Assembly: GCF_001194135.2 (NCBI RefSeq) | Contig: NC_068988.1 | Coordinates: 82,551,927 to 82,615,926 of the forward strand | Source of the DNA: Octopus bimaculoides | Taxonomy: Eukaryota | Reading direction: 5' to 3' | DNA length: 64,000 bases | Shown: in pieces, positions 629-54,030 of the stretch | Position numbering within the stretch: the first letter of the stretch is position 1 | How the letters are laid out: each line of letters starts with the position of its first letter | Made by a program: the position numbers and the translations under genes | Notes under the pieces: model-generated | What the model was told of the DNA's origin: nothing | The model's input: the letters and a program-made list of their open reading frames with translations, nothing else | Database searches by the model: none

Positions 629-849
629 TGCTTCATAACAACCCTGATAGGGACTGAAGGTGGAACCAAGGTAGGTAGCGTAGGCATACTGCTTCGACGT
701 ATGCTTTCCATGACATCTACACAATTTTCTTTTATGTTGTTGTTAGTCTCAGGATTCCCTTCTTTGGGTGTTAAAAAGACACGAAATGGTGAGACGCGGG
801 GTAAGGCCGCCGCAACGACGTGCGGAAGGCTTCTCCTTCGGTTTTCCAT
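629..849 (-). CDS. Candidate alternative first coding exon C (73 codons + 2 nt; MENRRRSLPHVVAAALPRVSPF...PSVPIRVVMK) of an unidentified large gene continuing left of the window
   Basis: ATG at 849 in strong context (ACA ATG G) with an in-frame TAA upstream at 862-864. The ORF is non-repetitive and richer in GC/CpG than its flanks. It ends at donor CA|GTAAGC (GT at 628-627); the ORF-track stop is the TAA inside the donor, i.e. phase 2. Confidence 0.75.
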
Positions 850-2050
850 TGTATATAATAGTTACACGGATATATTTTACAAATATATTTTGGTGCTGCC
901 ACAAATGTTTTCTTGATCAAAATGAGACAAAAGGCGACGAAGAAGAAACTAATTATAAAAACTGCTAGAGATCCATAAATATGAACAGTGGCATGACATA
1001 CTTTTTTCTTTTTTTTTTTTCTTCACATCATTTCAGTTTGAGTGCAAGAAGTGCAGGAAGAAAGAACATTTCTTTCGCTACATGTTGATTGACTAAGATA
1101 GTTTTATTATGGCAAGACATTCCAACGTAAGCGCTTGCTTTGATTTCCGTCCATAAATAAGAAGACAATCGTGTTTGTTGTTGCTGTCAAGACATCAGGA
1201 ATGGTACAGCTGCCACCTGTCATTTCAGCATGGATTGACGGTGCAACAATGAGCATTTTGTATATAATTTCAAGAGAAACTGAAAAGATATATTTATACT
1301 TTAGAAGTCATCCAGGCATCACACGTTGACAACAATAGCAGCAGCAGTCGTCACACACGAACAGGATGACCGAAAAGAATTCTATAGGCGGACTGACAGA
1401 CAGACAGATAGCAGGCAGCCACAATCCACCAGAAGCCAACGTTAAAGGACTCGTTGCTCCAACTACAATCCTTCGTGAAACGTTACAGCAGCGGCGGTCG
1501 TGGCGGCGGCGATGTTGTAGTAGTAGTAGTAGTGTTGAGAGAAAGAGTTGTGAGTGGTGATGATAAAAGGTGTTGCAGCAAGCAGTAAAGCTAGTTCCGT
1601 GGAAGGAAGAAATTATAATATTGTTTGTTGTCAGTCAGTATACACAGTGGCAGCAGTAACAACAGCAACAACAACATGGAGCCATAAAAGCATTATTACT
1701 ACCACTACTGCTTTCTTAATGAAATGTAGTGAGTGACAGAAGAAAAGTGTAAACGGGGAGGAAAGACGGGCGTAGATGATTAATGTTGTTGTTGCAGAAC
1801 AGCTATTTATTTTCACCTAAAAGAATAAAAATACACATAAACAAGAGATCCTGCCAACTAGTCGTGAAGATGGCAGCAGAAAGACTAGCAGATGGTGGAA
1901 TATAACACCACTAGGTCACTACTAGAAGCATTTAAAATGATGGTTTCAGGTAAACTTTAAAAGCCAATCTTTTGTTGCGTCTCAATGTCAGTTATAACGT
2001 AGTTTCTTGAATGGAACCATTAAAAGAACAAACGGCTTCAGATTCCAGAA
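850..2050 (-). promoter_or_regulatory. CpG-rich leader/promoter region upstream of exon C
   Basis: Many CpGs compared with the CpG-poor bulk of the window, short triplet runs (GGC, TAG, CAA), no recognisable TE. Acceptor-like ttttattcttttag|G on the minus strand at about 1817. Confidence 0.45.
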
Positions 2051-5000
2051 ACCCAAAAAACTTTCAATACAATTGAAATATAAATCTTTTCATGAAATAC
2101 TTCTGCAAAAACTTCTATACGGAAATAAAATTTAGAGGTTAAAATTTTCAAAATTTTATCAAAAAACTTTTTATTCATTGATTTTAAAAAGTAATTTAAA
2201 TACGGTATTCTGTATCTATTTTGTGTACATGTGGCCTTTTGTTACAAACTTTTCTACTGATATGAAAAAAAAAAAAATGAAAAGTTGAGTGAAAAGAAAA
2301 CTTAAAAGTGACAAAATTATTAGACACGAAGTGGAATGTTTATAATTGTATTATTGATGATGTCACTTGAAAGGGTAACTTAAGAGATCGAATTTGATCA
2401 ATCAAATGATAGGGATATTGCTACTACCACGTGTGATCTCAAAAGAAGTTTTAATGATATTGAAAACTTTAGAATGATTCTTTCTGATTAATCTTTGCAT
2501 TCAGAAGACACATTCCACACGATATACATATAAATACACACACAGACAAACATACACACACATAAGCGTATATAAACATAACCATATATATGCACACGCA
2601 CATACAGTGATTGCTTGACTCGCAAGAAATAGTAGTCATCTTCTTCAAGTGACACAGTCATGTATAACCAGGCAGTGTAATTATAGCCTAGATAGTTTAT
2701 TTTGAACAGACGAGCTGATCATGGTATAAGCACCTTTCATTATAGATCTGCTCAGTCATGGCTTACCTGGGGCTAAACAACAATTTATGCTCTTGCCTAA
2801 TCGACACCTGATACTATAATGCATTCCATTACACCACAACCACCTATCAAAATAACATATGCTACACAGTGCAGCCTTCACAACTGTACAATTCAACATT
2901 ATACATGAAACACTAAAATAATATCAGAAATAACAAAATAAACTCTACAAAGAGAAAAATATAATATACAAACATTAATTCTACACCCCTAAAAGGTAAT
3001 GCTGCACATACATACACCTGGAGCAACATGGAGGTGCATCTTGTACTACATAAGAAACTCACACGAAACTGCTGAAAATATAATTTTTTGCATTGGCAGA
3101 TAGCCATAGATTTGTGGGAGAGACCTGGTCAATCAAATCACTTGCTATAACACTGGTATTTATTCTATTGATCCTGGAGAGATAGGAGGCAGAAGTTAAC
3201 CCAATAATCAAAGGCTTTATAAAGGAAGCTGAAGCACTTTAATTTTTTTTTTATACCAACCCACCTGGGACTGATTTTCATTCTATGATACAAAGCTCTT
3301 GTTTCAAAGTGATATTAATTAAAATCCACCATCAAAATTTCATGCTAATTTATGTTCCTAACACCAGATTGATAATGGCAGTTAATTTACTAAATTCTTT
3401 GTTATTTTCAAAATTAAGTGAAACAAAAGCACTGTGTTTCAACAAGAAAATGATTAAAAAATGATTAATAAGGATAATTATTAAAATGCACAACTGAAAA
3501 TAGTATAAATGGTGTACATGTCTAGTGTGTAAACACTATAAATTATACAATCAACACATCTGTTCACAGAATGACTGAGGAATAATGAATACAATTATAA
3601 TCTATTGTTTAATATCCCACAGGAAGGAAAAGACTGATGTACCAGTAGACAATATATTTCCTTTAGTGTTCTTTTAAAAGATTGAGAATGGAATAAGACT
3701 ACTACACACAGAAAATAAATAATCCAATCAATACAAGACTAGAATAATATAAATTACACAGATTAGAGAAAAAATATGATTATACATGATATGTTTATAA
3801 TTACTACTGTCTTATTGCTGATTCTTTCCACAATTACCATATTTAAACAATATTTCTACAACTGGGTTATATCTAATGCAGCTGAGAGCTTTCATTATCA
3901 GCTGATATTTTCCAACATCAGCTGGAAAAATTGAAGTTTTTGCTACAAAGGGGATTACCTTAGGAATGTATTTTTTGAAAAAAATCTGTAACATTAAATT
4001 ATATTTAAAATTATAATACAAATGTACTTGCTTTATAAAATATAGAAAGTAAAAGTTAAAACAACTGGATCAAAGTTTTGAATTAATCAGTGGAGAAAGC
4101 TAAAATATTGAAACACTAAACAATAGTATTCTGAGTCCAAATCCCTGACAAAAGAATAACAATCCTTTCTGCTATGGGCACAAGGCCTGGAATTTAGGTG
4201 GAAGGGGCAAGTTGATCACATCAACCCCAATGTTTGATTGGTACTTATTTTGTCAATCCTGAAAGGATGAAAGGCAAAGTTGACCTCAGCAAGATTTGAA
4301 CTCAGAATGTAAAGATAGAAGAGATAACACTAAGCATTTTGTTGGGTTTGTTAATGATTCAGCCAGTTTGCCACCTTAATAATAGTAATAATAATTCATG
4401 TGGGAAAAAATTATAATATTTAAAATGTTAAAAACAACTATGAAAATTCAGGACAAAATGAAGTTAAAAAGATGTACAAGCCACAAAGCTGCTGTGATAT
4501 GAATAATGTTTAAACATTAAATTTAAATTTAAAATAATTAAGAATGAAAAACTGTTTAACCAATGTAGTCAGCAAAATAATGACATTCCGAATACTAGCA
4601 TACAAATAGTGTCCCCTCTCACTTCCCTCTCTACCACTACCTGAGTCTGATACCCAGAGCTGGTTTGTCTTGTGCCATACTGCATCTGCCTCATACTAAA
4701 ACCTACACTCAATCCTTCCTCCCTAACATTATCCATGTCAATCTCACTAGTCTCAGATGGTCTGCAAAGCCCATGGGAACACCAAACTAATAAAAAAAAT
4801 TTTCTAAGTATTTAAATGAACTTAAGGACAAGACCAAATATTTAATTCCCTTCTAAGAAGTGAAAGTGTTATGTAATTTAGACCCAAAGCTGAGCCATTC
4901 ACCTTAAATGTTGAAATGCTGTCAACAAAGAATATATTGATCTTTAACAAGAGAGGTAACTGAAGTACAGAAGTATGGATATATTAACCAAGACATAAAT

Positions 5001-5689: not shown

Positions 5690-6524
5690 CAAAGTCTGAT
5701 CAATAAGTATTCAGACTGTTGCCAAAGTAACGAAGCTAAAGCATGCAGAGTGAAGCCACTTGGCACAGATTGACCTCGACCTCTGCTGTGCACTAAGTTT
5801 TAATGTTCTAGCTCACTTCTGTTGTTTACAGCAGTACTTTGAAATAATGTGTGATCATCGCATTGACCATGACAGAGAAAGTTGTCATGGCGATACCTGC
5901 TCAGAGGCCTATGCAAAGTTGCAGAAAGTGTATGGAGAGGAGTGTATGAGCCACACACAACTGTGTATGAGTGGTTCAGATGCTTCCAAGATGATTGAAA
6001 AATGTCAATAGTGACAAAACAGTCTGGGAGACCTGCAACCAGCAGAACTGAGAAAAACATTGCAGATGTACATGCAGCTGTGAGGGGAAATCGTCGAATC
6101 ACCATCCGTGAGTTATCAGAGGATATGCAGTTAGTTACGGTTCAGTTCAGTCCATTATCACTGAAAATTTGGGTATGAGACATGTGTCTGCCAAGTTTGT
6201 GCCAAAACTGTTTTCAACTGACCAAAAAGACACAGGTTTCAATTGCACAAAATCTCCTTGATTGTCTCAAGAACGATGAAAACGTTTTTGAAAACTTTGC
6301 ATAGATATCGCCAAGTTTTTAACAAAACTTGATGCAGATTTCAACTTTCTCTGTCATGGTCAATGTGATGAACACATGCTACACACATTCCTTCCAAGCA
6401 CTGCTGTAAACAGCAGAAGTGAATTAGAACATTAAAACTTAGTGTAAATGCACAGCAGAGTTCAAGGTCAATCTGTGCCAAGCAGCTTCACTCAACAGTC
6501 CAGATACTTATTGATTGGACCACA
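5690..6524 (+). mobile_element. Internally deleted, degenerate mariner (Tc1/mariner) element
   Basis: Imperfect TIRs (gtctgatcaataagtattcagactgttg at left; caacagtccagatacttattgattggac at right) with TA at 6525-6526. Frameshifted N-terminal transposase: KVYGEECMS...SGRPATSRTEKNIADV...RRITIREL...LGMRHVSAKFVPKL. No catalytic domain. Confidence 0.85.
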
Positions 6525-9641: not shown

Positions 9642-10219
9642 CAGAAACATTTTCAAAGCGTTTTATGGACTTTTTGTCATAGCGTCTCGTCTGACCAAAA
9701 TGCTAGGGGAGACTCGTGACGACACGTGGCTTGTTCCACTGATCGTTTCGCAGCAGTTAATAATGCTGCGATTGTTTTGGAGTGTTTCCATTAGGCTGAA
9801 ATATATACAGATTAAAGAAATACAAAACCGAAACCAAATTAACCTGCTGATTATTTTATTGATGATGATCTAAAACAAATTAGTAAAACATTTTATTAGT
9901 CACACATGACCTGTAAAGATGAATGTTGCAAATGAACTCAAACGGAGTGAATGCCAGAGAGAGACAAACTAGATAGAAAAATCTATAATAATGTTTCTGC
10001 AATCATACTAAGTATGGAATGAAATCTAAAATATAACATTCGTAATCTATGGAACAAAATCGAACACGTAATCAGTACTACGTAGTCAAGAATCAAACGC
10101 TTTAGAAAAAGTAGAATTTCAAAAGAAAACATTAAATGTACTGCTTACTGTCCCGCTACCTAACCCAGGATGACATCCTAAAATGAAAATAATGTGTATG
10201 TGTGATAACAAAGATTACC

Positions 10220-11085
10220 CGAGGGGGTACCCAAAAGTAACCGATAACGTTCTCTGTAGGACAAACCCGTTGTAGTTCAGGCTTCCGGCGACAAGCCACT
10301 TGATGCAGCCCTCAGGCATCAGTCTGCCGGCGTCGTCAGCTGCGGTCGTACTGCCACGTAGTACGTCTTTGTTTTGCAGTGCTTCTCCCCTGTTCGTTGA
10401 TTTTTGCGATGCCTGAAACGAAGGCAGAGCGTGCTACCGTGAAATTCTGTTTTCTGCTGGGGAAAGCGGCGGCCGGCCAAAACAGTTGTCATGCTTCAAA
10501 CACCTTACAAGGACACTGCTGTGGCTTTAAGAATGGTCACCTGTCACTTGAAGGCCAACCTCATTCGGGACGACCATCAATCTCTCAAACGAATGAAAAT
10601 TCATGATCTGATCTTCGAGGAACGTCGCCCAACAATTGAGGAATTTGTTGATATGACTAGTGTGTACTGGAGCTCCTGCCAACGAATTTTGAGTGAAGAA
10701 TTACAAATATAAAGAGTTACAGCAAAATTTGTACCTCACTTGCTCATAGAAGATCAAAAGCAGTCACAACTGAATGTGTGTTGTGGACTGAAAGAACAGT
10801 TGGCAGTTGATATGGACCTTATTTCAGGCGACATCACTGGTGATGAAAGCTGGTGCTATGGAATTTGCAGATGTGGAAGAAGTGAAGAAAAAAAAAAACA
10901 ACGGAGGCATTAAAAGGCATCACTTTGCAAGAGTTCCAGCTCTGCTTCAAATAATGGAAAACACTCCTGGGCTGATGCATTGCTTCAAATGGAGAATACT
11001 TTGAAGGTGATAAAAGTGTAAACCTGTAAAACTAAGTGGATAAAATTATATTGCAAAATTCTGGTTTCTTTTGGGTACCCCCTCA
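10220..11085 (+). mobile_element. Internally deleted mariner element (second lineage)
   Basis: TIRs cgagggggtacccaaaag / cttttgggtaccccctca with TA at 11086-11087. Transposase remnants: RATVKFCFLLGK, HSGRP, AKFVPHLL and first catalytic motif TGDESW, fused directly to the C-terminal FADVEEVK...CIASNGEYFEG. Confidence 0.9.
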
Positions 11086-11449
11086 TATACCAAAACCTAA
11101 ATGTTTCATTGTGTTGTAGTTATCTTTGTAATAATCACAGATACAGTACTTAATATTTTTAGAGTTCTATGCAAAACCTACAAATGTGAGTTTGTATTTT
11201 TATATAAAGCCATGGAGATGTTGAAGCCTAGAAGTTAGGCCCACATGGCATATGTATGCAAACTTATGTCTCAGAGTTGGCATGTGCAATGACATCTTTC
11301 ACAGCCTGGAGGAGGCTGTTCAAACTGGAGTTGATGTCCAGGAGTAATGTGGCATAGGCTAAAAAGTTTGAATTTGTAAATATAATCATCATACACACAA
11401 TCCCCAATGCTTTATTTTTCTCCTTAGCTGTCATATCACAAGACAAAGA

Positions 11450-11795
11450 TGTGAAAGATTGTGGCAGTTGGGTAAGAAGTTTGGTTCCCAACCACATGGT
11501 TCTAGGTTCAGTCCCACTGTATTGCAGCTTGGGCAAATGTCTTCAACTGGAGCCTCAAGCCAACCAAAGTCTTTCGAAAGAATTTGGTAGACAGAAACTG
11601 AAAGAAGCCTGTTGTGTTTGTGTGCATATATCTTTGCGCCTGTGTTTGTCCTCCACCACCGCTTAACAACCAGTGTTGGTGTGTTTACAACCCTGTAACT
11701 TAGCAGTTCAGCAAAAGAGGCCAATGGAATAAATACCAGGTTTTGAAAAACTTAAGTATTGGGGTTGGTTCCCTGACTGAAACAAGTAAAAGATA
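11450..11795 (+). mobile_element. Abundant SINE family with tRNA-like head and internal (TG)n region
   Basis: ggtaagaagtttg...ggttcagtcccactg...ttgggcaa...ggaaactgaaagaagcc pattern, repeated many times in the window. Confidence 0.7.
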
Positions 11796-17769: not shown

Positions 17770-17915
17770 GGCACAGGTATGTCTGTGAGGTTTGCTTTGC
17801 ACTTGCATGGTTTCAGGTTCAGTCCTACCTGGGGTAAGTGTATTCTACTATAGTCCCAAGCCAACCAATTGGTTGTGAATGAATTTGGTAAATAGAAACT
17901 GTATTTAAGTCATGC

Positions 17916-17960
<45 letters not shown>

Positions 17961-18260
17961 ATGTGTATGTTTATGGGTGTATGTGTGCATGTATTTTTTG
18001 TTTTTATTGTTTTAGTGGAAGTGTGTGCACATATGAGCACTTATTTGTGCTTGTCCTTCCTACTGTTTTGTTTAAGTCTGGTACTACATATTCTATCGGT
18101 CTCTTGTTATTAAACTGCCATAACTTTGCAGTTCAACGACAAGAAACCCATAGAGTAAGTAGTACCAGACTTAAATAAATACTAGAGTTGATCTGTTTGA
18201 CTAAACCCTTCAAGATGATGCTCAAATACAATCACAGCCCAATGACTGAAACAAGTAAAA
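17770..18260 (+). mobile_element. SINE copy, same family as 11450-11795, with expanded (TG)n
   Basis: Same head, core and tail motifs; (TG)n at about 17919-17958. Confidence 0.7.
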
Positions 18261-20604: not shown

Positions 20605-21847
20605 CAAGAGGTGGGGAGTCAAAAATTATCTACATTTTCACCAAAACTTTCTTTAGGTTGGCTATACTGCCTTCAACACTTCCAAGCTAAATGGAGATAT
20701 TCTTGTGGTTAAATAACCGAGGTCTGACCTTGATCGCTCCAGTTTGTTTTCTTGTGCTACAGAGTAAAAAGGCCACAGGAAGAACAGTGATTTTTCTGGG
20801 GATGAAACTCACTGCAGACTTTCAGTACCATATGGGGACAGCACTCTACCATGTAGAAGTGTGTATGCGTGGATCAAGAAATTTTTAAATGGCCCAGAGA
20901 AGTATGAAGCACAAAAAGGAAGCAAGACACCCACCAACTTCCACCACTGATGTGAAGATTCAACAAGCTCAAGAGATGGTTCTGGCAAAGTGACAAGTGA
21001 CCATCAATGATGGTGGCAAGTTTTCTGCAAATTAGTCATGGTTTTGCATACATTATCATCCACAACAAGCTTTGCTTCTGTAAAGTCTGTGCTAGATGGG
21101 TGCCAAAAGTGCTTACTGAAGTGCAGAAGTGCAAATCATGTGGAGATTTGTCAACGCTTACTTGACCGCTACAACAATGAAAGTGAAGCTTTTTCAAGGA
21201 TATAGTCACAGGAGATGAATCCTGGGTCCATTACTTTCAGTCAGAACCCACAATGCAAGGTATGAAGACGAAACACCTAAAATTGCCAGTGAAAAAGAAA
21301 TTCAAGACTCAACCTTCTGCAGAAAAAATGATGCTAACCATTTTGGGGATGCAAAAAGGGCCTATACTGGAACATTAACTGGAAAAGTGGTTTACAGTCA
21401 CCAATGTAGAATACAGAGAGACGCTGGCCAACAAACTGAAACCAGCAATTCACACCAAACACCAGTATTTATTGTCAAAGCAAATGTCATTGGTGTACAG
21501 TAATGTATACCCACATATAGTTGCCTACACCATTAAGACCATTGAAAAATTGGGTTTCAAATTACAGAGACAGGCTGCATACAGTGCAGATGTCGCTCCT
21601 TCCAATTATCACCTTTTTGGAGCACTTAAACATCCTGTACTACAGATGAAGAAACTCAGGAAGCAGTGCATAAATGGTTGCACAACCAGCTGAAAACCTT
21701 TTTCTTCAGTGGAATAAGCTTTTAGATTGCTAGAAGTGCATCGAAAAGCAAGGAGATTATGTCAAAAAAACGATGTAATTGTTCAAACCCTGCTTTTGTT
21801 TTAATAAATTATAGAAACAAGTGTGTATAACTTTTTATTTACTCTTA
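20605..21847 (+). mobile_element. Near full-length but decayed mariner transposon (third lineage; transposase pseudogene)
   Basis: About 1.25 kb between degenerate TIRs with TA at both ends. Contains WVPKVL, TGDESW (21208-21225) and a YSPDLAPSDYHLF-like motif (YSADVAPSNYHLF), with many stops and frameshifts. Confidence 0.88.
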
Positions 21848-31645: not shown

Positions 31646-33068
31646 AACATGCTGGAAATCATAAAGGGGAATAAGAACAACCTTAGGTAAAATGAATCAA
31701 GGTGTCTATGATAGAATATTTATCAAATGATAAGTTATAAACTGGAAGTTGCCAGCTATTTTAGAGTGACTGAAATTTTTGGTACATATTAATGAAAATA
31801 TTTCATGAAACTAAAACAGGTATAAAAGCTATAATATGAATGCCGACACACATCATTACATAAGATAAAATTAATATTCATGAGAAAATTCTCCTGCAAC
31901 AAATGTTTACATGTTTGATATAATTTTAACAGTTAAACAAAAGAATTTTTTCTTTTTGTTTTAATTAATGATATTCAATATCATTAGCATGCAATTGCTT
32001 TCATTTTTAGTTATTTTCAAGGTTAGACTGCAGTCAATTTTACCGGTATCAGTATATTTATGTTTTGTCGTTAATATGAATATTTAATCAATCTTTATGT
32101 AGGAGTATTACGAGGAAATAAACAGCTTGTTACATAAAACCCAATTATTTTTTCACATATAAAGCTGAATATTTTAATAAGTCAACAAAATTAAATCAAG
32201 AACTAGCAATTAGCTTTGTTTACATTAATTCCTTTAGGTTTTTAGTCCATATAAAAGTTTACTTTCTTTTCAGCAACAATGTCTTCTACATTGAAAACCA
32301 TAGTAGGAATTGATTTTATGCTATTTCAGTGGGATACTTAAATAGAATTTCTGTTTATAAAGATTCATAGCTATGTTAATCAGCTTCAAGCAGGAATTAC
32401 AGCATAACTTATAACACGAAATTAGAAAACATGATAAACTAGAAAAAAAAAAAAAAACAGATACCCATTTTCTCTTTCTTTTTTTTTTTCTTTTTTTTCT
32501 TCTCTGAATTTTAAGTTAATCTTATTCATATCATGTGATGATAATATGAATTTAAATAAAACATTATCTACAAAGTTTTTGGACTGGAAGCTATAAAATA
32601 AAACCATAATTGATGATAATAAATACAGTCAATTTAAATCATAACTACTAGAAGAGATTATTTAAACAAATTTAGAATAATAAAAAATATTAAAACATGT
32701 GTTCTTTATTTCATGTGTGTATGAAGGTCAGTTGCATGAAGTATATTTTTAAGAGGCAAAAATATTTACAGACAAAACAGAAGGAACCATCCAATGATGG
32801 TTGATGTATCTGTCATCCCAATATCAGCAACAGTCATTTGTTTCTATAATAAAAGGTGGTATACCTTTTAGTTATACTAACCTTTTGCTACACATTTTTA
32901 ACAAATATATATATCTATATATATAACAATATAACACTCTTGGTGCAGCTTCACTGAGAAAAATGTCATCAATGATTGGTAGTGACTGTTAATTTTGTTA
33001 ATAACAACATGTAAACACATGAACTGACGGTGGGGTGTGTAGAAAGAAAAAAAAAATAGGGAAATTAC

Positions 33069-33190
33069 CTGAATGATTTAACGATGGCATAAGCAGCAAA
33101 AAGGAAGTTATCAGAAAAGCTTTTATCAACTGTAGCCTTAGTATGCATCGTCCTTGGCCAGGGGAATGTTATATGAGGCTGGGTTTCCAT
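33069..33190 (-). CDS. Candidate alternative coding exon B (40 codons + 2 nt; METQPHITFPWPRTMHTKATVDKSFSDNFLFAAYAIVKSF)
   Basis: ATG at 33190 in strong context (AAC ATG G) with an in-frame TGA upstream at 33254-33256. Unique, non-repeat sequence. Ends at donor AG|GTAATT (GT at 33068-33067), phase 2. Confidence 0.6.
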
Positions 33191-35949
33191 GTTAACTGCT
33201 ACTGTATTATCAATAGTAAACCAACAACTTTGACTGCTGCTGTACAAGACTGTTCAATGAAACAAATCTTTGTACAACAGCCAAATTTTATCGACCATAA
33301 GCAGCTAATATCTACTATACCAGCAAGTTGAGAGTAGAACTCACTTCTTTCCACTATAGGATCAACTAGTAAACAGACACTTGAAATAAAAATCTCGTAG
33401 TGGATTTTAATTTACTTATTTATTTTGTTCGACTGTTGTAATATTAGAGTTTTAAAAATAAGTGACAGTCAGAATATTTAGAGGTGTGGTGGGAGAGGAT
33501 ACACCCACACTATTTTTAAACAAAATCAAATTAATTGAATGATGATAGATGAACATATTCTATTAACATTTTGAATATTGAAGTAAATGTTGTGTTGTCA
33601 ATCTTTTCAATAATCTAGAATTCGTGTTCATATTTTATGAAGTGTATTATGAAGTCATATTAAACAAATAGTGTTGACACTAAACATGACAGGTTCAATT
33701 TCAATCAACAGCTGACTTGCCTAGTAAAAGTAGAATATAAATGTTCAATTTGATCAATGAGTCATCATATATAAGGTCACAAGCTAACACTAGTATAGAC
33801 TGCCAAGTCTGGTTACTACATTCGATTACTTATGCAGCGATAATTTGAAAAAAATATACGTATTGACTGCAGTATATCATATGGAATAAGCACTCGAGAT
33901 GTCATTTCATCAAGAACAAAAATAGTACTTCATGGAAACTGATATTAGCTTTTAAAAATATTTCTCCATATTAAACTTAAATTATAGAAAAACTTAATGT
34001 TAATCAGATAGTCCTTAAAGTGAATCTAATTAGAAAGAAAAGAAAAAAAACTAAGCTGACATCATTCCATCAAAACAAAAATAGTTTTGTTTAGAGCAAG
34101 TGATATGACAGGTGAAGATAGATATGAAATACAATCATAACATGTATAAAACAAAAGAGAGTACATGAAAAATAACTTTACATTCTTAGAAGGTATTACA
34201 TCGTAGAACTGATTATCATTGTTGCTTAAAAAGATTTGATCTGACAATTAACTGCAAACAAAACTATACATCAATGTTCAGGTACTTTCTTGACATGACA
34301 AAGTATTAAATATACAGTTAAAATTAAGTTATTTTAGGATAGTAAACTTTAAAACAGTAGTTTTGGTATTTTATAAACACTTTTTCACTATTGCATATTC
34401 TGCAAAAAATAAAAATTACTTTAATCAAACAGAATCTAATTTTATGCAGTGATTTATTTTTTCCCCTTTTCCTATCCTATCTAGCAAATGACCCCTTTTT
34501 TAGATATCTATCTTTGACCTTTTGTTTCTATATTTGGACTGCAGCCATGCTGGGTCACCATTTTGTAGGGTTGTCAAACAATGGTGGGGAACAAAACACA
34601 CACACACACGACAGGCTTCTTTTAATTTGTCTCTCAAATCTACTCACAAGGCTTTGATCAGCTCAGGGTTATTGAGGAAGGTGCTTATCCAGGGTAATGC
34701 ATAGTGGTACTGAACCAAAGACCACATGGTTGGAAAGCAAGCTTCTTACACCACAAACGTGCCTATTAAAGGCGAAAAACTAGGTAACAAAATTATGTTG
34801 GACCTTGTATGTCGTGTTTTTCTGTTCACTGGTAACACAATGTCCTTCTCATATCTGAATACCGTCAAAGATATTTTTTTTAACGAAAATATGTTTGAAA
34901 TATAAGTATTGTGCATAGTTTAAATATTTAATTTCTAAGAAATATCATGACATTACTAAACACCCAGCATACACAATCCCACAGTGCTCCCTTCTGAGGT
35001 CACAAGGTCACCAAGGAGGTGCTATTACCTACATTAAGAATCATTACTCCAAACAGTATTAAAAATCTGTTTTAATCAGTGCTACTATAGGTGAAAATTC
35101 TCTCAAACTAAGAGGGAAAAAATCTATAATACATACATCAAAAATTTGTTTTAAATCTCGTAACAATTATCTGGAAATATATAACTAACAACCCTGTAGT
35201 TGGAAAGTGCTTGAAAGATTTATATAGTTATAGAATATACAATTTTCTTTTTTTTCCTTTTATCAAAACTGCAACACCATACTGTGGCAAAAATAGAGTT
35301 TATGGATAGGCACTCTTTAAAGTTTATTATTAGGAAAGACAACTGAAGAACATCAAATAAGAGAGAAGACTGAAAAGGGTTAATATGTTGAGAAAGATAC
35401 TCCAAAGGGGTTAAGGTGTTGAATGACACTCCAGACTGTTCTGCTGAACAATGACGTGAGAAATAATAGAAGACAAGCTTTATGAATATGGGAAGATAAT
35501 ATCAAAAACACGATAGTAATTAACTTTCACAGTATCAACACACTTCTATAATACAAAATCACAAAAACTATCCATTTTAAAATTAAATCATTACGTGAAA
35601 GTGTATTCCAATCACCTTAGTTCATTTACAAATCCCTCCAAATTCTTCGTTCACCATCATCATTTAACATCCATGTTCCAAGCTGGCATGGGTTAGATGG
35701 TTTGACAAGTTGCAATGTTTCTGAAGACTGCACTGTGCTCCAGTGTCTACTTTAGCATGGTTTCTACAGTTGGATGATTATTTTTCAATATAATTGAAAC
35801 ATACAGACAGTGTGAATCATTAGAAATATGATCATAAAATAGTTGGCAACAAAACAATACAGAGAAAACTTTCTATCAGGTTCCACATGGATATTAGGTG
35901 TAAGGGATGAACAATTCGTTTGTTAGAATAGTAATGTTGATATATGACA

Positions 35950-36940: not shown

Positions 36941-39116
36941 AGACTGTTATGGAGCCTACAAGATTAAATTCTACTCCAGCAGGGAAAATGGGTCTTTAAA
37001 GCATTTGAATACAGAGGTAGTGAAAACACAGAATGTGATGCAAATAGACAAGACTAAGTTAAACATAAATGAAGAAACAACAAAAGCATTGGCCAATGTA
37101 TGTCACACATAAATGTGATGATACTTGCAATATGAAATATAGACAGTAGTAGATAGCCATAGTAAATCTAGTAACAACTACATTGGATCACTGATGACTA
37201 AGTCTTTATGTAAGGATTCAACTTATCAATATACAGTAGTGGTTTCCCTTGCAAGGTTCTTACACAGAGCTGTTATATCATTGTGTTACATACCTTGGTA
37301 CAAGGTGGACCAACTAGTTAAGTGTATAGGCCATCAATGATAGGACGTATATTGTCGATCTGCTTGGTTCTCCACTTTTAACTCAGCTATTCACATTTGC
37401 TATGGTAGATGTAGACAACAAAAGAAAAGTAAATCATAGGTGAAATAATTAAACCAGATTTACTATCACTGGCCCATAATGAAATAACAGCATTGATCTA
37501 CACTGGTGATGAAGATGTTTAGAATGCTGATTATGGCAAACATGAGAAGGATACAAGATGCTTTGTGTTTTCTGGGCTGGTATCCCATGTTTCTGCTGCT
37601 GGTACTTGAGTAAATTTTACTTGTCAGTCATTTATAGTTCATAAAAGGTAGAAAGCTGATAATATTGAAGTTAATTAAATTACAAGTCTTTACAAAATGT
37701 AGTCTTCTTCCAAGTCAAAAGAATTATTTTATCAGGAAATGAAAGATTACACATTAACAGAATATGTTATATTCCCTAGCTAAGGCTAATATAAAAAAAA
37801 TTCAGTTTCATAATTAAACAGAATTTGAACTAAGATAGTTACCATCAGTATTAAGCAAATTATTTTGATTTTTGATTCTTCAAACAATTTAAAAGGTTTT
37901 TGAATTATTTCAAATGAATTATCTTAAGAGAAAACAAAAACTGATTTTAAAATATTTAATAATGATATTTAATAATTCAATTTGGAAAAGTTATCTAATT
38001 CAATTAAGCTAGTGAGATGACTGACAAAATGGTCAGGAATTATTTTTAAAAAGTGATAATAGATATAGAATTGTTTTCTGTTACTGTTTTTTTAATGTCT
38101 AAGTCAGAGAAAAATCATACCCATGATCCTTTCTAAGACTGGTGGATGCCAAAAAGTTGAACTGGGTGACTGAGTAAGTCTACTATCCAAGGGCAAAAAC
38201 AAAAGGCTTCCACAGGTTCCCAAAGGCAAAGACTTCCACAGTTTCCCAAGGGCAAAAGCACTTAGTTTACCCTGTACCAAATCTTATTCACCAGGCTTTG
38301 GAAGAAGACACACACCTAAGACTGTGTGTGATAGCAGTAAATCAAAACCTACAGTCGAAACAGTATTTTATTTAAAATATCCAACTTCCAGCATTAGAGA
38401 TATTTGCAAAAACATTCCAAATCCTGATAGTAAGGAAATATAGACTAAATTTGGACTTAGCAACCAAAATTTAGAATACTAAAAGAAAATTGGGGTTGGG
38501 TAAATATATTATCAAGGAAAACAGGGACACCTCCATCCCCCAGGAGTTGCATGTTGTTTCTCACTTAGCAAGTCACTCATCATCATTGTCTTTATTTTTG
38601 TTTTTCCTTCGTTGATATGGATTTGATGGGTCAAAATAGTCCAGTCAGTCCATATTTAAACTGGTGGGAAAACATTTCTGCTTGCTGATATGGTTATGGC
38701 TGTGCGAATAAAGAATTCACTTAGCAGTCATGTTGGGTTCAGTCTTACTGCAGCACCTTGGGCCAACCAAAGCGTTGTGAGTAGATTTGGTAGACAGAAA
38801 GTGAAAGAAGTGTAAATATGGATGATGATGGTGGTGTGTGTATGGCTCCTTGTCTTGGTGTTGCACAATAGTTGTAAATGAGTGCCACCATTACATAAGT
38901 GCTATTCGTTTTTAATTTTCCATGAAAAGATATCTGGCCACGGGGAAATATCTTCTTACCTGGAAACAGGTTAATTGGCAACAAGAAGAGTATTCAGTTG
39001 TAGGAAATCTGCCTCAACAAAAGCCATCTGACTCATGCAAGCAAAGAAGACTGGACATTAAAATGATAAGTGTATATATATTCAACATTATAAAGAGAGA
39101 GGATTATATTCATTGT

Positions 39117-47109: not shown

Positions 47110-48591
47110 AGTGTGGGTTATAACCTAGTCACCCGTATAGTTAGGGATGCTGTCAGTAAGGTGAGGGTTGGCAACAAGTATAGCAAAGAATTCAGAGTGT
47201 AAGTAGGGCTTCACCAAAGATCAGTCTTCAGCCTCCTCTTGTTCATCAAAGCCTTCCAGGCAATAACAGAATTCAAGACAGGCTGCCCCTGGGAGCTCCT
47301 CTATGCTGATGACCTTTTGTTCTTATAACTAAATCACTACCAGAACTAGAGAAGTTTCCGGTGTGGAAGTAATGTCCTAGGCCTTAGAGTTAATCTAGCA
47401 AAAACCGAAGTCTTAGTAAGTAGGAAAGCAGACAAATTAAAAATCCCTTCAGGTAGATGGTTCTGCTTGATCTGTAGGAAAGGCGTAGATAGAAACTCCA
47501 TAAGATGTACCCGGTGTAAGTCATGAACACTTAAGAGGTACAGCAATATCAGAGGAAGGTTAACAGGGAAAATAGTTTTTGTGTGTGGAAGTTGCACACA
47601 TACAATNNNNNNNNNNAAGTGACTAAGTCAGTAGCAGGGGTGGATATTCAGAGAGCTCCTACCTCTGCTGGTAAGAAAGGGCCTCTCTCTCAGAATGAAA
47701 GATAGACTGTATGATGCCTGTGTGTGAACAGCCATGCTACACAGCAGTGAAATATGGACAGTGACTACTGATGACATGCCTAGGCTTGTAAGAAATGAAG
47801 CTTGTATGCTTCACTGGATGTGTAATGTCAGTGTGCATGCACGACAGTGTGTAAGCATCCTGTGAGAAAAGTTGGGCATAAGAAGCATCAGATGTGGTGT
47901 GCAAGAGAGATGACTGCGCTGGTATGGTCATGATGTATATGGACGAGGACAGCTGCATGAAGAAGTGCTGCACTCTAACGGTAGAGGGAACCTGTGGTAG
48001 AGGTAGACCCAGAAAGATATGGGATGAGGTGGTTAAGCATGATCTTCAAATGTTGGGCGTCATGGAGGCAATGACAAGTGACCAAGACCTTTGGTGATAT
48101 GCTGTGCTTGAGAAGGCCCATCAAACCAAATGAGATCAGAGTCATTGTCAATGCAAGTGTCGCGTAACTAATACATAAAAAGTACCTTCCAAATGTTGGG
48201 TGATATGCTGTACTTAAGAACTGTTAAACCAAGTAAAATCATAGTTGTGACTGATGCCAGTGCCATCTGACTGGTACCCATGCTGGTGGCACGTAAAAAG
48301 CACCATTCAAGCTTTGGGCCATGCTAGTGTAGACCTGTCAAGTCAAGTGAGGTCATAGTCGTGGCTGATGCCAGTGTCACATCAATGGCACCTGTGCGAG
48401 TGGCATGTAAAAAACACCCACTACACTCTTAGAGTGGTTGGTATTAGGAAAGACATCCAGCCATAGAAACCTTGCCAAATAAGATTGGAAACTGGTGCAA
48501 TTCTCCGGCTTACCAGTTTTCGGCCAAACTTTTTAACACATGCCAGCATGGAAAGCAGACGTTAAATGATAATGATGATGATGATGATGAT
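47110..48591 (+). mobile_element. 5'-truncated RTE LINE (RT domain to 3' tail)
   Basis: GCPWELLYADDL (YADD at 47302-47313), LRWYGH and RGRPRKIWDEVVKHDL, then a 3' UTR ending in a (GAT)n tail at about 48570-48591. Small N gap at 47607-47616. Confidence 0.9.
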
Positions 48592-48600
48592 TTATATATA

Positions 48601-48990
48601 TCATCATCATCATCATCATCGTTTAACGTCCACTTTCCATGCAAGCATGGGTTGGACGATTCGACTGACGACTGGTGAAACAGATGGCTGCACCAGGCTC
48701 CAATCTGATCTGGCAGAGTTTCTACAGCTGAATGCCCTTCCTAACGCCAACCACTCCGAGAGTGTAGTGGGTGCTTTTATGTGCCACCAGCACGAAGGCC
48801 TGTCAGGCGGTACTGGTAACGGCCATGCTCAAAATAGTGTATTTTACATGCCACCTGCACAGGAACCAGTCCAACGGCACTGGCAACAATCTTGCTCGAA
48901 TGACTTTTCACGTGCCAGGAAGGCAATGCTGGTAACGATCACGCTCGAACAGTGCTCTTAGCGCTACACTGGTACAAGTGCCATCATGAT
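48601..48990 (-). mobile_element. RTE-tail-type repeat with (GAT)n tail, opposite orientation to the adjacent LINE
   Basis: Begins (CAT)n-cgtttaacgtccactttccatgc on +. Same family as 26686-26965 and 58464-59060. Confidence 0.8.
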
Positions 48991-51957
48991 TTCGCTTTAA
49001 ATATATATAACATATAAATGTAATATAAGATATATATCTAAATTGTGTATGTGTGCATGTGTACTGATCGAGTGTCCCAATTTCAGGTCTTCAGAGTCTC
49101 CTTGCATTTACTCTGGCTGGTTTTGTGTTGACATTGAGTGAGACCAGCTGAAATACTTGGGTACATGTTTAGCCACTTCCCTATACAACACATTGCAAAG
49201 AACAGACAAGGAAACATACTCAATAAACAAAAATCTAACACAAATGCACAAATTTGATCCTTTCTTTAGTTCGAAATTGGAAATCATTACAATTTTGGAA
49301 TCTAAAAGAATTGTTCATTTCAATGGTGTCCATAACTTATTAGTGTACCAAGGATACAGACAAGTGTGCATAGAAAATGTTAAAATACAGATCAAGATAA
49401 ACAAAAAATATACAAAGTCTTTAAACGAAAAACAATAGTAACACAAGTTGTGAGAATGAAAAGGAAAATGAAGGCACAAGACAAAAGAAACAGGTGAATA
49501 TATATGTAATCATAAGACTTGATAAGTTTAAGTTAAAAAAAATTTCAAAAAAAAAAAAGATAAATTTGTCTTTTTGATTGGTTAAGTAATGTATGGAGAA
49601 AAATACAGCACCTGACAAAAAATACAGCCTGACAAAAAGCAATATCTTATAAGTGGCTTTGGTCAGCCTAAGGCTATAGAAGACACATGAAGTGCCACAC
49701 AGTGGAACTGAACCAGGAGCCAAGGAACCATGTGGTTGGGAAATAAGCTTCTTACCACAGAGCCACACCTACACTTTATATATATACATTTAAAGGACCA
49801 GTTAATTTTGTGAGGTGTAAATTTATGGCTAGAACTAGTTCACTGAAATATTACATACCCCTTAATTCTAAGTTTAAAAATATGTAAAAATAAGTCAACA
49901 TTATAGATGAATAGTGTGTGTGTGCGCGCGCGCGTGCGCACATGATAATGGAAATTATCTATATACATATAAGACAATAGGGTGTTGTTTCGGGAAAATT
50001 TGGTTATCTATTGGCAAGTGCACACTAAGAACAGCCTGGAATTACATGATTAAAAGAGGACTTCTCTTAGTATGACATCATTTTTAATGCCTTCAGAGTG
50101 AAAACTTACACATCAGTTGTTTATATAGTTTCATATTTAAAGGGCAGTTATATCTGTGTAATACCATAGTTTTCATTTGTAAAAATAAGCTCACCCATTA
50201 CCCCTGTAGAAAACAGCCTGCTCTGTGTGGTGCAGTTTACAAAGTTCAAAGTAAAAGAAGTATGAGATAGTTTGTTGCATAAAGCTCCAACAAAACTAAA
50301 CCAAGAAACAGAATAAAGTAGAAAACTCATATATTATGGTTACTGGTGCAGAATAAAACTTATTCAGGTTATTTCACTGTAGTAGAATGTAGTAGGTAAA
50401 AGCAAAGTAGTGGTGGCCACTATTTTGAGGATATATCACAAAAATATGTTTATTAATTATAGTGGAAATGCTGGTGGAAAGGTGATGGTTAGCTTTTTTA
50501 ATATATTCTACGATTTTGACCTACAACTGAGGAGACCTGAGAGGTGAATAGGGTGCAAATGAGACCTGACAAACATAAAGCATAATAGGAGAAATGAAAG
50601 GATGAATAACATACAGAATAAAATTAGAAAAAGAGTGAACAGGACCCTTGAAATGAAAATAAAAACTGTCAGGCCTGCTTATTTCCCTTATAGGACGTAA
50701 TTTATTTCACAAATTTTTTTCCATTTACAAATAAAAACTACAACATTATTTTGAAATAGTTTTCATAGATTGCTTATGGCTAACTTTGTGAATAGAATCT
50801 TTTAGTTTGTCTTGTATTACTGTCTTGTATTCTTCATGTCATAAAAAAAAAACATAAAATAGTTCTTAGTAAACGATACTGAATATGTTCAAATACTGCT
50901 GTATGGTTAAGAAGCTTGTTATTCAACCATGTGATTTTTAGATTCAGGCCCACTTTACAGTACCTTAGGCAAGCATCTTCTACAACAGCTTTGGCTGACC
51001 AATGCTTTGAGTGAATTTGGTGGACAGAAATTGTCTTTTGTTTTAAGGATGAATTCAAATATTTTAATGTATTTTATACAGCAATAATTATAAATCTGTC
51101 TAAACTCTTCTCCTCCCTCCTATACAACTTAATAGTGACAAAACTCAATGCATATTACACATAAGAGATATTTTTTCCAGGATATCACTGTCCAAAATTA
51201 GGTCTTCACATAACACAAGTGCATACTTTTACAGGCTTGTTTATTTGTATTTGTTTTACCTAAAATACTGTGTGAGTGTGTGTATATAAAACAGTATATA
51301 CCATGTAGAATACAAAGACACACACAGACACTTATATATATGCATTATATCATAATAAAAAGGTGTATGACATTTGTGATGTGTATACAAACATTCAACA
51401 GCACCAGCTGTAATATTATGTCTCTGAGAAGCTTCTCAAAAACCAAGCTCACTCAGAACACCAAAAACAGATCAGACAGTGTTTTGACCTCATTTGGTCT
51501 CCTCAGTGCTTACTGATGTCTACAGCTGAATGAATATCTTTTGGCTTAGCTTGGAATGTCTAGGGAAGTACATTGCTGAGAAGAATAAATGAGGTTGAAA
51601 TTGTTTGATGATCTGCCGAAGATATTCTGAGTTGAGCCCCATATTTTTTGATATACAAATATCTTGAGAAGTTTCCCCAGAATCAAAATGTTACAGCTTG
51701 TGCTATTTCAGGTTTGTATATACATTAAAACTATTATACACACCATTATGACACATATACACATACATACAGTTTGTTCTTGCCTTTCCTCCTCTCTATC
51801 TTACACCCTATTCCAAAGGACAAAACGTTCTTTCCACTTCTCTAAGCATCTAACTTAATAATGTTGACTGTCAACTTGTTCAGTCACATTGTTTTGTTCT
51901 TTTGATGTCTATATATAATATATTTACAGACAACAATGTGTGAGGGTATGAGTCTAA

Positions 51958-52365: not shown

Positions 52366-52436
<71 letters not shown>

Positions 52437-53737
52437 TTATGTAATTTATAACTACATATATGTCTAGGTGTTTAAGAGGTCAACCACTTGTTTTCAGGTT
52501 CAGTAGCACTGCACAGCACTTTGGGCAAGTGTCTCCAACTATAGCTCCAAGTTGACCAATGCCTTGTGAGTTTGGTATATGGAAACTGTATGAAGCCCAT
52601 CATGTGTGCATCTCAATAAATAAATTTTCTTTACGTTCACCACTTGAAAAACAGTTGTTTGTTTATGTTAATGTAATTTAATCGTTTGACAAAAATAGGG
52701 ATCAATAGAATAAGTAATACACTTAAAAAATATGTACTGGGGTCTATCAGACTGATGGAAACCTTTGATGATAGTGCCCCAAAATGGTTTCAGTCCAATG
52801 ACTGAGACAGTAGATAAGTCACATAAGATATGTACACAAAATATTGATAATATTTATGTATAACATGTCTGCATAATACATAAAAGATATATAAAAGTAT
52901 ATGCATATATATATATATATATATATAATTTATATATGTGCATGTGTTTACATTATATGCATGTCCCCTAATTCAGCAGTTCAACAAATAGCACTCAATA
53001 AAAATGTTTCATGGGGTCAAAATAATCATTTAGAACCCACAAAGGTAGTGTCCAGCATGGCCACAGTCCAAACACTAACACCAGCTAAATAGTATATAAT
53101 GCATCTAAATTGAGATGATTACAGCTTGCCAGGCTATTTTCACCAACATTGTTGAACGTTGTTGTCATGAAAATGTTGTCATATATATTGACTTGGCATG
53201 TTGTAAGTTAAAAAGAAAATTTTAAACATATCTAATTTGCTCAAGCCAGCTAATAATTAATTACCTGAAGCAGACAAAAAAAAAAAACTAACTTAGAGAT
53301 TTGTAACGTAAACTAAGTAGACGGTCGTCAAAACATTTATTTTTGTATTTACTTATTCCAGCAGATTTTTTTTTAATATTTTCTTCCTTCACATGTTCAC
53401 ACAACATGTGTGTTCATATGTAGATGTGTTTACATCTATACACAACGTGTTCATACATATAAACCCACTAATGTAATTGTGTACATGTAGTGCATGTATG
53501 AGCTCATGTAAATTTGCTTTTACAAATAAATATATATATATAAAGAGATAATCAAATTACATGCTTCTGTGATCTTACTCCAATAACAAGTTATGGATAA
53601 TGCATAATTCACAAGAATTTAAAAATCAGAGTTGGAAATAGAATTGAATACATACTGAAACAGTTTTAGTTTTTTTTTTGTTTTGTTTTTTTCTATTTCT
53701 CTTTTCTTTTTTTTTTCTTTTACAATAAAATTCTTAC

Positions 53738-54030
53738 CTTTCCTGAATTTTTCTTCTAAAATGACTATCATGCCTGTAACAAAATGGAGGTGATTTGATG
53801 GGGATCGGTCGATCATAAGGCAGTGGAGACACGGACCGCCTTGCTATAATACCACTGTCACAGTGAGTGCCAATGGATACAGCTCTCCTTTGAAGTGGTG
53901 GAGAAAAACTTCGTTGCATCAAAGTAGGAGACATAGGTTGAGGGGCCATCTGGGGTATCTGTGTGAAACTTAATGCCGATGGGATGTTTGGATAGGAATA
54001 ACATGTCTGTATAGTCAAATTGGGATACAT
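53738..54030 (-). CDS. Candidate alternative first coding exon A (97 codons + 2 nt; Pro/Ser-rich, MYPNLTIQTCYSYPNIPSALS...RRKIQE)
   Basis: ATG at 54030 with an in-frame TAA upstream at 54061-54063. The 293-nt open frame is clearly GC-richer than the flanking AT-rich DNA. Ends at strong donor AG|GTAAGA (GT at 53737-53736), phase 2, followed by a purine/A-rich intron start. Confidence 0.75.

What the first reader, a model, noticed from the sequence alone, without database searches (positions are those of the whole stretch)
629..54030. Array of at least three frame-matched (phase-2) alternative N-terminal exons spread over 53 kb
Seen in sequence: three isolated minus-strand ORFs (54030-53738, 33190-33069, 849-629), each with an ATG, an upstream in-frame stop, unique sequence and a GT donor falling after the second base of a codon. 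No recognisable conserved-domain exon lies between them. Inference: they are mutually exclusive first exons from separate promoters that splice onto one shared exon left of position 1, giving interchangeable N-termini. Established knowledge: PDE4 long isoforms use many unique first exons joined in phase 2 to the UCR1 exon (x|FDV[D/E]NG). PDE4/dunce is therefore one candidate host, but nothing in the window proves it.
Basis: partly seen in the sequence, partly recalled or inferred. Interest (0 to 1): 0.75.

Follow-up and report, generated by a model that had tools for sequence, protein, structure and literature searches.

The report
Alternative first exons of octopus TSC22 gene
The three small reading frames are real, conserved 5' coding exons at the front of an octopus TSC22/bunched-type leucine-zipper gene, not PDE4, and this family is already known to swap N-termini through alternative first exons, so the finding is correct in outline but ordinary.

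Summary
All three minus-strand ORFs exist exactly as described. Their shared phase 2 is partly built in, because each ORF stops at the TAA inside G|TAA.

Exon A (849-629) is identical over 73 residues to the N-terminus of Octopus bimaculoides protein A0A0L8HA40. That protein continues ...[24 protein letters not shown]..., a TSC22 box (Pfam PF01166). The host gene is therefore a TSC22/Dip/bunched family member, and PDE4 is refuted.

In cuttlefish and pearl oyster, the first exon ends in phase 2. It joins a 46-nt shared exon that begins cag|T GG..., so phase 2 is biologically correct.

Exon B (33190-33069) ends with DNFLFAAYAIVKSF. Among 3,038 candidate phase-2 GT sites, it is the best match to the motif that precedes this junction in other invertebrate short TSC22 isoforms.

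Exon C (54030-53738) is conserved with a Sepia-like contig. The DNA similarity runs only from the ATG to the donor, and pN is 0.17 against pS 0.60. Its splice partner is not shown, and an in-frame C-to-B splice remains possible.

Alternative 5' exons on a common TSC-box exon are textbook for bunched and TSC22D1-4.

The parts
629..849 (-). Exon A. This is the first coding exon (73 codons + 2 nt) of a cephalopod-specific short TSC22 isoform. The ATG is at 849-847 and the donor GT at 628-627 (AAGCA|GTAAGC, phase 2).
   Evidence: It is 100% identical to residues 1-73 of O. bimaculoides A0A0L8HA40 (P0004), which continues [20 protein letters not shown]... and carries PF01166. It is 72% identical to Sepia pharaonis CAE1275770.1. 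DNA similarity to the Sepia locus is confined to 624-850. pN is 0.137 against pS 0.795, with differences by codon position of 13/6/42.
850..1550 (.). CpG-rich patch directly upstream of, and running into, exon A. It is a candidate promoter or 5'-UTR region for the A isoform (inference).
   Evidence: CpG observed/expected is 0.90 here and 0.97 in exon A, against 0.27 for the whole window. It contains (CTA)n/(GCC)n-like triplet runs. No transcript start was mapped.
33069..33190 (-). Exon B. This is a candidate first coding exon (40 codons + 2 nt) of the conserved short isoform. The ATG is at 33190 and the donor is TTCAG|GTAATT (phase 2). The predicted junction is ...AIVKSF-S-GSSTV.
   Evidence: The 14 residues before its donor (DNFLFAAYAIVKSF) rank 1st of 3,038 open phase-2 GT sites on both strands against the pre-junction tails of 28 invertebrate TSC22 N-termini. 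Its best score is 40 against a next best of 31, and its top-5 mean is 28.8 against 19.2. The best values in a 57-kb control locus were 24 and 18. It aligns with Haliotis, Pinctada, Magallana and Mytilus first exons of similar length. There is no direct transcript or ortholog hit.
33229..33241 (-). Four AG dinucleotides upstream of B's ATG that would act as phase-2-compatible acceptors in B's open frame.
   Evidence: They mean an in-frame C-to-B splice cannot be excluded by arithmetic. Their polypyrimidine content is weak (0.45-0.6).
53738..54030 (-). Exon C. This is a conserved coding exon (97 codons + 2 nt) with the ATG at 54030 and the donor GAAAG|GTAAGA (phase 2). It is probably a further alternative 5' coding exon of the same gene. 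The predicted junction is ...RRKIQE-S-GSSTV.
   Evidence: It is 67% identical to residues 140-235 of P0001, from a 3.9-kb Logan genomic contig. DNA similarity is confined to 53734-54033, from the ATG to the donor. pN is 0.171 against pS 0.604, differences by codon position are 24/9/42, and indels are in frame. An ORF of at least 95 codons ending in a donor of this strength is expected 0.003 times per strand. The link to the TSC22 shared exon is inferred.

Best explanation
The window is the 5' part of the TSC22-domain (TSC-22/Dip/bunched) gene of Octopus bimaculoides or a very close relative, transcribed on the minus strand. The common 3' exons lie to the left of position 1. They are a 46-nt exon beginning Y-GGN-TCN... 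([15 protein letters not shown]) and a last exon encoding the TSC box and leucine zipper.

Several 5' coding exons, each with its own ATG, end after the second base of a codon. Each is joined to that 46-nt exon, whose first base (T in Sepia and Pinctada) completes the junction codon. That gives CA|T = His for A and AG|T = Ser for B and C.

The products share the dimerising TSC-box/zipper C-terminus and differ only in their N-termini:
- A is a cephalopod-specific 73-residue N-terminus with two conserved RRxSxP sites.
- B is the widely conserved short-isoform N-terminus.
- C is a cephalopod-specific Ser/Pro-rich N-terminus with conserved RRAxS and RRSxSP sites.

What is shown: the A junction and the identity of the host gene; the exon-shaped conservation and purifying selection on A and C; the junction-anchored homology of B; and the phase-2 acceptor in two other molluscs.

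What is inferred: that B and C splice to the same shared exon in octopus, that the exons are mutually exclusive, and that each has its own promoter.
For: The exhaustive HMMER search with the three peptides gave two hits. P0002 matches A at 72% identity over residues 1-70 and then continues into a TSC box. P0001 matches C at 67% identity.

P0002 is Sepia pharaonis CAE1275770.1, with Pfam TSC22 PF01166 at E = 2.3e-28. P0004, UniProt A0A0L8HA40_OCTBM, is identical to ORF A over all 73 residues and continues [41 protein letters not shown]....

A Sepia-type transcript (L003) mapped on the Sepia genome (L002) gives exon 1 ending ...AAG CA|GTAAGA, a 36.7-kb intron, a 46-nt exon 2 (cag|T GGT TCA ... 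ATG|GTAAGT), and then exon 3. Pinctada has the same structure, with a B-like first exon ending ...TTC TG|GTAAGT and exon 2 starting cag|T GGA TCT.

The junction residues of the invertebrate isoforms listed (C, S, D, F, G, H, R and the like) are all NNY-encodable. This fits a pyrimidine contributed by the shared exon.

Other support: B's rank-1 junction-anchored score; exon-confined DNA similarity and pN much lower than pS for A and C; and the CpG-rich patch at exon A.

Literature: the Drosophila bun locus gives six transcripts, each with a distinct 5' exon and probably its own promoter, and all share the C-terminal TSC-box exon. Mammalian TSC22D1 and TSC22D3 behave likewise (PMC2253523).
Against: No transcript or protein containing B or C joined to the TSC box was found in any library searched. 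C shows no significant similarity to the N-termini of other TSC22 isoforms. A first, unanchored profile built from the same 28 tails did not rank B first, and pairwise BLAST of those N-termini against window ORFs gave only noise. The anchored test was designed after I had noticed the resemblance. The regions upstream of B and C are CpG-poor and gave no promoter evidence. The shared exons are outside the window and were not read for octopus. Identity to A0A0L8HA40 identifies the species only to the level of Octopus bimaculoides or a near relative.
Confidence: 0.8

Rival explanations
1. C is not an alternative first exon of the TSC22 gene. Either it belongs to a separate upstream minus-strand gene, or it is an upstream exon that splices in frame into an extended exon B (C-to-B-to-shared exon), giving one longer isoform rather than interchangeable N-termini.
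For: No C + TSC-box protein exists in 1.84 billion representatives, although such a protein should have formed its own cluster. C has no detectable similarity to other TSC22 N-termini. Four phase-2-compatible AGs lie in B's open frame upstream of its ATG. Haliotis isoform X4 (P0024) has about 140 residues in front of its B-like motif. The only homologue, P0001, is an unspliced read-through ORF on a genomic contig.
Against: C has the same strand and the same donor phase as A and B, and lies 20.5 kb upstream of B inside the same locus. No other gene signal was found between C and A. The candidate acceptors before B are weak. B-type exons are N-terminal, starting at Met and about 41-56 residues long, in most molluscan proteins.
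Confidence: 0.3
2. The three ORFs are chance open frames in AT-rich intronic or intergenic DNA, and their common phase is an artefact of ending at G|TAA.
For: The phase is by construction. In the window, 44 of 187 ATG-ORFs of at least 40 codons end in a G|T-stop, and about 13.7 per strand are expected in simulated sequence. By length and donor score alone, A and B are unremarkable. Pfam finds nothing in the peptides.
Against: A is identical to an annotated octopus protein N-terminus. A and C are conserved with decapodiform cephalopods only within the ORF limits, with mostly third-position changes. B is the top-ranked junction motif of 3,038 sites.
Confidence: 0.03
3. The host gene is PDE4/dunce, and the exons join a UCR1 exon x|FDV[D/E]NG.
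For: Only the general resemblance: many phase-2 first exons and RRxS sites.
Against: The annotated octopus and Sepia proteins that start with exon A continue with [19 protein letters not shown] and a Pfam TSC22 domain, and contain no PDE domain.
Confidence: 0.01

Closest known systems
Drosophila bunched (bun) locus, isoforms BunA-F
   Same: It is a single invertebrate TSC22 locus. It has several distinct 5' exons, probably with separate promoters, that give different N-termini on one common C-terminal exon encoding the TSC box and leucine zipper (PMC2253523).
   Different: The octopus/mollusc gene has a separate 46-nt shared exon with a phase-2 acceptor before the last exon. N-termini A and C have no detectable counterpart outside cephalopods. 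No long BunA-type exon or RFRV/RWTC motif is present in this window.
Vertebrate TSC22D1 (TSC22D1.1/1.2) and TSC22D3 (GILZ isoforms)
   Same: Many alternative N-termini all converge on ...SS|[19 protein letters not shown]. The short isoforms carry a hydrophobic N-terminal motif. The C-terminal part of the octopus protein matches PDB 1DIP (porcine DIP/GILZ) at E = 3e-19.
   Different: Vertebrates have four paralogous loci. The junction residues and N-terminal sequences differ. Homology of B to the vertebrate FSISFLSSLL motif was not tested.
Molluscan short TSC22 isoforms (e.g. Pinctada imbricata FSP39_014371, Magallana gigas A0A8W8IG81, Haliotis rubra LOC124288072 X4)
   Same: They have a first coding exon of about 41-56 residues ending in a D-x-[FL]-L-x-x-[AS]-x-x-x-[LV]-[KQ]-[SN]-[FY]-type motif. 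A phase-2 donor follows directly, then the shared T|GG-TCN exon. Exon B fits this pattern.
   Different: B's junction codon would be AGY (Ser) rather than the usual TGY (Cys). No cephalopod protein with this N-terminus was found in the libraries.
PDE4/dunce long-isoform first exons
   Same: It follows the same general principle: many unique 5' exons joined in one phase to a common exon.
   Different: It is a different gene family. The shared exon here encodes [15 protein letters not shown], not FDV[D/E]NG.

Membership tests
TSC-22/Dip/Bun (TSC22 domain) gene family | The product contains the TSC box plus leucine zipper (Pfam PF01166). | tested here: met
   P0004 (O. bimaculoides A0A0L8HA40), whose residues 1-73 are encoded at 849-629, carries PF01166 (precomputed). 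The Sepia ortholog P0002 scores 98.6 bits against a cut-off of 30. PDB 1DIP matches at E = 3e-19. The domain-coding exons themselves lie outside the window.
TSC-22/Dip/Bun (TSC22 domain) gene family | Distinct 5' exons give alternative N-termini on common 3' exons. | tested here: inconclusive
   This is met for A. It is supported for B by junction-anchored homology. It is only inferred for C, which is conserved and in the right phase but has no known splice partner.
TSC-22/Dip/Bun (TSC22 domain) gene family | In molluscs, a shared 46-nt exon with a phase-2 acceptor (cag|T GGN TCN ... GCC ATG|gt) downstream of the first exons. | not testable with these tools
   It lies left of window position 1, and the octopus locus could not be fetched. 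It is present in Sepia pharaonis and Pinctada imbricata. It is implied for octopus by the K-H-G junction (CA|Y) in P0004.
Conserved short-isoform N-terminus of invertebrate TSC22 proteins (exon B) | A hydrophobic motif immediately before the phase-2 junction. | tested here: met
   B ranks 1 of 3,038 sites by both statistics. The control locus maximum is far lower. Caveat: an unanchored profile did not single out B.
PDE4/dunce | First exons spliced to a UCR1 exon x|FDV[D/E]NG, and a PDEase catalytic domain in the product. | tested here: not met
   The products that begin with exon A continue [10 protein letters not shown]... and are 150-153 residues long with only a TSC22 domain.

The most novel reading that the evidence does not exclude
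Cephalopods have added two lineage-specific N-terminal exons (A and C) to the ancestral TSC22 gene. Each carries paired basophilic-kinase or 14-3-3-type sites that are conserved between octopus and cuttlefish: RRRSLP and RRSS[ML]P in A, and RRA[VM]S and RRS[VM]SP in C. This would create phosphorylation-gated short TSC22 isoforms that have no counterpart in other animals. Exon A's SPFRVF...NCVDVME might be a degenerate relic of the RFRV...RWTC WNK/NRBP1-binding region of long TSC22D isoforms.
Probability: 0.2. Interest if true: 0.35.

Novelty: new member of a known kind. Interest (0 to 1): 0.2.

Why it matters
The result corrects the gene assignment from PDE4 to TSC22/bunched. It also shows that a reader working from sequence alone correctly recognised an alternative-first-exon array.

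Biologically it adds little. Alternative N-termini on a common TSC-box/zipper are the defining feature of this family, and exon A is already in UniProt.

The modest new points are these:
- A candidate octopus ortholog of the conserved short-isoform first exon (B).
- A cephalopod-conserved extra coding exon (C) that is absent from the protein libraries searched.
- Evidence that the phase-2 junction onto a 46-nt exon is shared by cephalopods and bivalves.

These points would help to annotate TSC22 isoforms in cephalopod genomes. Long and short isoforms of this family are thought to antagonise each other in growth control (PMC2253523).

Tried and rejected
- The search for homologous proteins with C and with A returned nothing. 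These were false negatives: the same tool later listed P0004, which is identical to A over 73 residues. I give no weight to its negatives.
- Pfam on the three peptides returned nothing.
- BLASTP of A against C found no similarity.
- Pairwise BLAST of 36 invertebrate N-termini against all window ORFs gave only noise. B versus Haliotis scored E = 0.8.
- An unanchored HMM built from the last 14-20 residues of 28 N-termini did not rank B first, because hydrophobic AT-rich ORFs compete. I replaced it with the junction-anchored rank test.
- C against the N-termini of Dreissena isoform X2 and 19 other isoforms of at least 60 residues gave z of 2.5 or less, which is not significant.
- Exon A against the RFRV...RWTCVDVYE region of human TSC22D4 and D1 gave p of about 0.015 for one pair and was not significant for Sepia or for D1. 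The human sequences were recalled from memory; only the motifs are confirmed, in PMC12266122. I treat this as unproven.
- No B-like or C-like exon was found in the Sepia locus L002, which covers 10 kb upstream plus intron 1.
- The octopus locus and several molluscan loci were not on record.
- The apparent CpG-rich spot at 31.25-32.0 kb is a (TG/CG)n microsatellite, not a promoter.
- No long-isoform motif (RFRV, RWTC, FQITSV) occurs in any window ORF.


Full report
**Observation.**
- C is 54030-53738: 97 codons + 2 nt, with donor GAAAG|GTAAGA.
- B is 33190-33069: 40 codons + 2 nt, with donor TTCAG|GTAATT.
- A is 849-629: 73 codons + 2 nt, with donor AAGCA|GTAAGC.

Each starts with ATG and has an in-frame stop 10, 21 and 4 codons upstream respectively. 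None is repeated in the window.

The five assembly gaps within the span all lie between the ORFs. No frame argument crosses a gap. Only the spacings and the "nothing in between" statement depend on them, and about 1.75 kb is unread.

**Chance.**
The shared phase 2 is partly built in. Each ORF is closed by the TAA of G|TAA, so a GT after codon position 2 is automatic. In the window, 44 of 187 ATG-ORFs of at least 40 codons end like this. A third-order Markov simulation gives about 13.7 per strand.

With a generic donor matrix, C scores 6.0, B 4.0 and A 1.6. Only C is improbable from sequence alone. An ORF of at least 95 codons ending in such a donor is expected 0.003 times per strand. B-like cases are expected 0.5 times, and ORFs of at least 70 codons about 1.9 times.

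All three are GC-rich islands: 0.43, 0.41 and 0.475, against flanks of 0.28-0.37.

**What the host gene is.**
Word-indexed protein searches with C and A found nothing. An exhaustive HMMER search with the concatenated peptides found two proteins.

P0002 has residues 1-70 at 72% identity to A. It then continues [41 protein letters not shown].... It is Sepia (Acanthosepion) pharaonis CAE1275770.1 and has a Pfam TSC22 domain at E = 2.3e-28.

Searching with P0002 returned P0004, UniProt A0A0L8HA40 of Octopus bimaculoides (153 aa). Its first 73 residues are identical to ORF A, followed by [11 protein letters not shown]....

It follows that:
- the window comes from O. bimaculoides or a very close relative;
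- exon A is already annotated;
- its donor is used in phase 2 (CA|Y = His);
- the host is a TSC-22/Dip/bunched family gene, not PDE4.

Searches should have found P0004, so negatives from that tool are unreliable.

**Gene structure in relatives.**
A spliced Sepia-type transcript (L003, from an SRA run) was mapped on the S. pharaonis genome (L002). It shows:
- exon 1 ending ...AAG CA|GTAAGA;
- a 36.7-kb intron;
- a 46-nt exon 2, cag|T GGT TCA AGT ACA GTA GCC ... GCC ATG|GTAAGT;
- then the last exon.

The pearl oyster Pinctada imbricata has the same plan. Its first exon ends ...TTC TG|GTAAGT and its exon 2 begins cag|T GGA TCT AGC.

The shared exon therefore has a phase-2 acceptor and supplies a T. 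This predicts His for A, and Ser (AG|T) for both B and C. The junction residues of the invertebrate isoforms listed are all NNY-encodable, which is consistent. They could not be fetched.

**Exon A.**
DNA similarity between the window and the 57-kb Sepia locus is limited to 624-850, which is the exon itself. Between the two species pN is 0.137 and pS 0.795, with differences by codon position of 13/6/42.

No AG lies between the upstream stop and the ATG. A therefore cannot continue an upstream reading frame.

The exon and the 700 bp upstream have CpG observed/expected of 0.9-0.97, against 0.27 for the window. This suggests, but does not prove, an unmethylated promoter region.

**Exon B.**
There is no database hit, though a 40-residue diverged ortholog would fall below threshold.

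The molluscan short TSC22 isoforms end their first exon, directly before the junction, with a hydrophobic motif. Examples are DSFLVAAFSYLKSY in Haliotis, DSLQFAAITYVKAL, EHFIQAAYIMFASF and KNLLLGALSLLQSF. B ends DNFLFAAYAIVKSF.

Pairwise BLAST and an unanchored profile were not discriminating. I then scored every phase-2 GT site with 14 open codons upstream. There were 3,038 such sites on both strands. Each was scored ungapped against the pre-junction tails of all 28 invertebrate N-termini of at least 30 residues.

B's donor ranks first by both statistics. Its best score is 40 against a next best of 31, and its mean of the top five is 28.8 against 19.2. In the 57-kb Sepia control locus the best values were 24 and 18. 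The alignment also matches in length and in an upstream F-P/Y-P element.

I designed the test after seeing the resemblance. Its reference set and statistics were fixed beforehand.

**Exon C.**
P0001 is a 236-aa ORF on a 3.9-kb Logan genomic contig (ERR3431203; L001). It ends ...SHFRRKIQER, the same read-through into GTAA.

DNA similarity to the window covers only 53734-54033, from the ATG to the donor, and nothing in the flanks. pN is 0.171 and pS 0.604, differences by codon position are 24/9/42, and indels are in frame. C is therefore a coding exon under purifying selection, with a conserved start and donor.

Its partner exon is unknown:
- no C + TSC-box protein exists in the libraries;
- it shows no significant similarity to other TSC22 N-termini;
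- its upstream region is CpG-poor;
- B has four phase-2-compatible AGs upstream of its ATG, so C-to-B splicing is arithmetically possible.

**Comparison with what is known.**
Gluderer et al. 2008 (PMC2253523) describe the Drosophila bun locus. It gives six transcripts, each with a distinct 5' exon and probably its own promoter, all sharing the C-terminal TSC-box/zipper exon. Short isoforms can antagonise the long one.

Mammalian TSC22D1 and TSC22D3 likewise have alternative N-termini. The vertebrate hits show many N-termini converging on SS|[10 protein letters not shown]. The array seen here is the normal architecture of this family.

No long-isoform (RFRV/RWTC) exon is in the window (motifs from PMC12266122).

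**Verdict.**

My estimates are:
- A is certain.
- B is probably (about 0.85) a real alternative first coding exon.
- C is almost certainly a real exon, and about 0.6-0.65 likely to be a further alternative 5' exon of the same gene.

This is a new member of a known kind, of low general interest.

Noticed in passing
tool behaviour (versus 31): the search for homologous proteins reported no candidates for peptides A and C. Yet its own database holds P0004, which is 100% identical to A over 73 residues, and P0002. The collection also holds P0001. Negatives from that word index cannot be trusted for short eukaryotic exons.
   Followed up: partly
window 629-849 and 53738-54030; L002 10001-10211; L001 1275-1568: Paired basic-Ser motifs are conserved between octopus and Sepia-type sequences. 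Exon A has RRRSLP and RRSS[M/L]P. Exon C has RRA[V/M]S and RRS[V/M]SP. They look like PKA/AGC-kinase or 14-3-3-type sites.
   Followed up: no
window 757-795 (exon A residues 19-48): SPFRVF...NCVDVME resembles the RFRV...RWTCVDVYE WNK/NRBP1-binding region of long TSC22D isoforms. The critical Arg and Trp are missing, and the similarity is not significant (p about 0.015 for one pair, none for Sepia).
   Followed up: partly
window 1-64000: The + strand has A>T in almost every 2-kb bin, so the minus (sense) strand has T>A, and this includes the 10 kb upstream of exon C. This may be a transcription-associated skew. If so, the gene may start further to the right of the window, for example at a long-isoform exon. 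The minus strand also has 29 ORFs ending in a G|T-stop, against about 13.7 expected.
   Followed up: no
window 572-916 (+): A 114-codon GTG ORF lies antisense to exon A. It is most simply a by-product of the GC-rich, stop-poor coding exon.
   Followed up: no
window 5760-6011, 10379-10712, 21472-21693 (+): These are decayed mariner/Mos1-like transposase fragments. There is a faint HTH_48 hit at 5760-6011, below the Pfam cut-off. The region 10001-10750 has CpG observed/expected of about 1.
   Followed up: partly
window 26765-26995 and 48566-48961 (+), 11431-11724, 17825-18040, 38745-38984, 50834-51058 (-): Dispersed repeat families are visible as recurring ORF peptides, such as ...TRLQSxLAEFLQLxALPNANHSESVVG... 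and ...SVYQIxSxxFGW.... They are probably cephalopod SINE/TE copies.
   Followed up: no
window about 31400-31650: A (TG)n/(CG)n compound microsatellite produces a spurious CpG-rich signal 1.5 kb downstream of exon B.
   Followed up: yes
L001 858-1274: In the Sepia-type contig the frame of exon C stays open for 139 codons upstream of the conserved ATG, but without any similarity to octopus. The 236-aa called gene is probably an over-extended ORF.
   Followed up: partly
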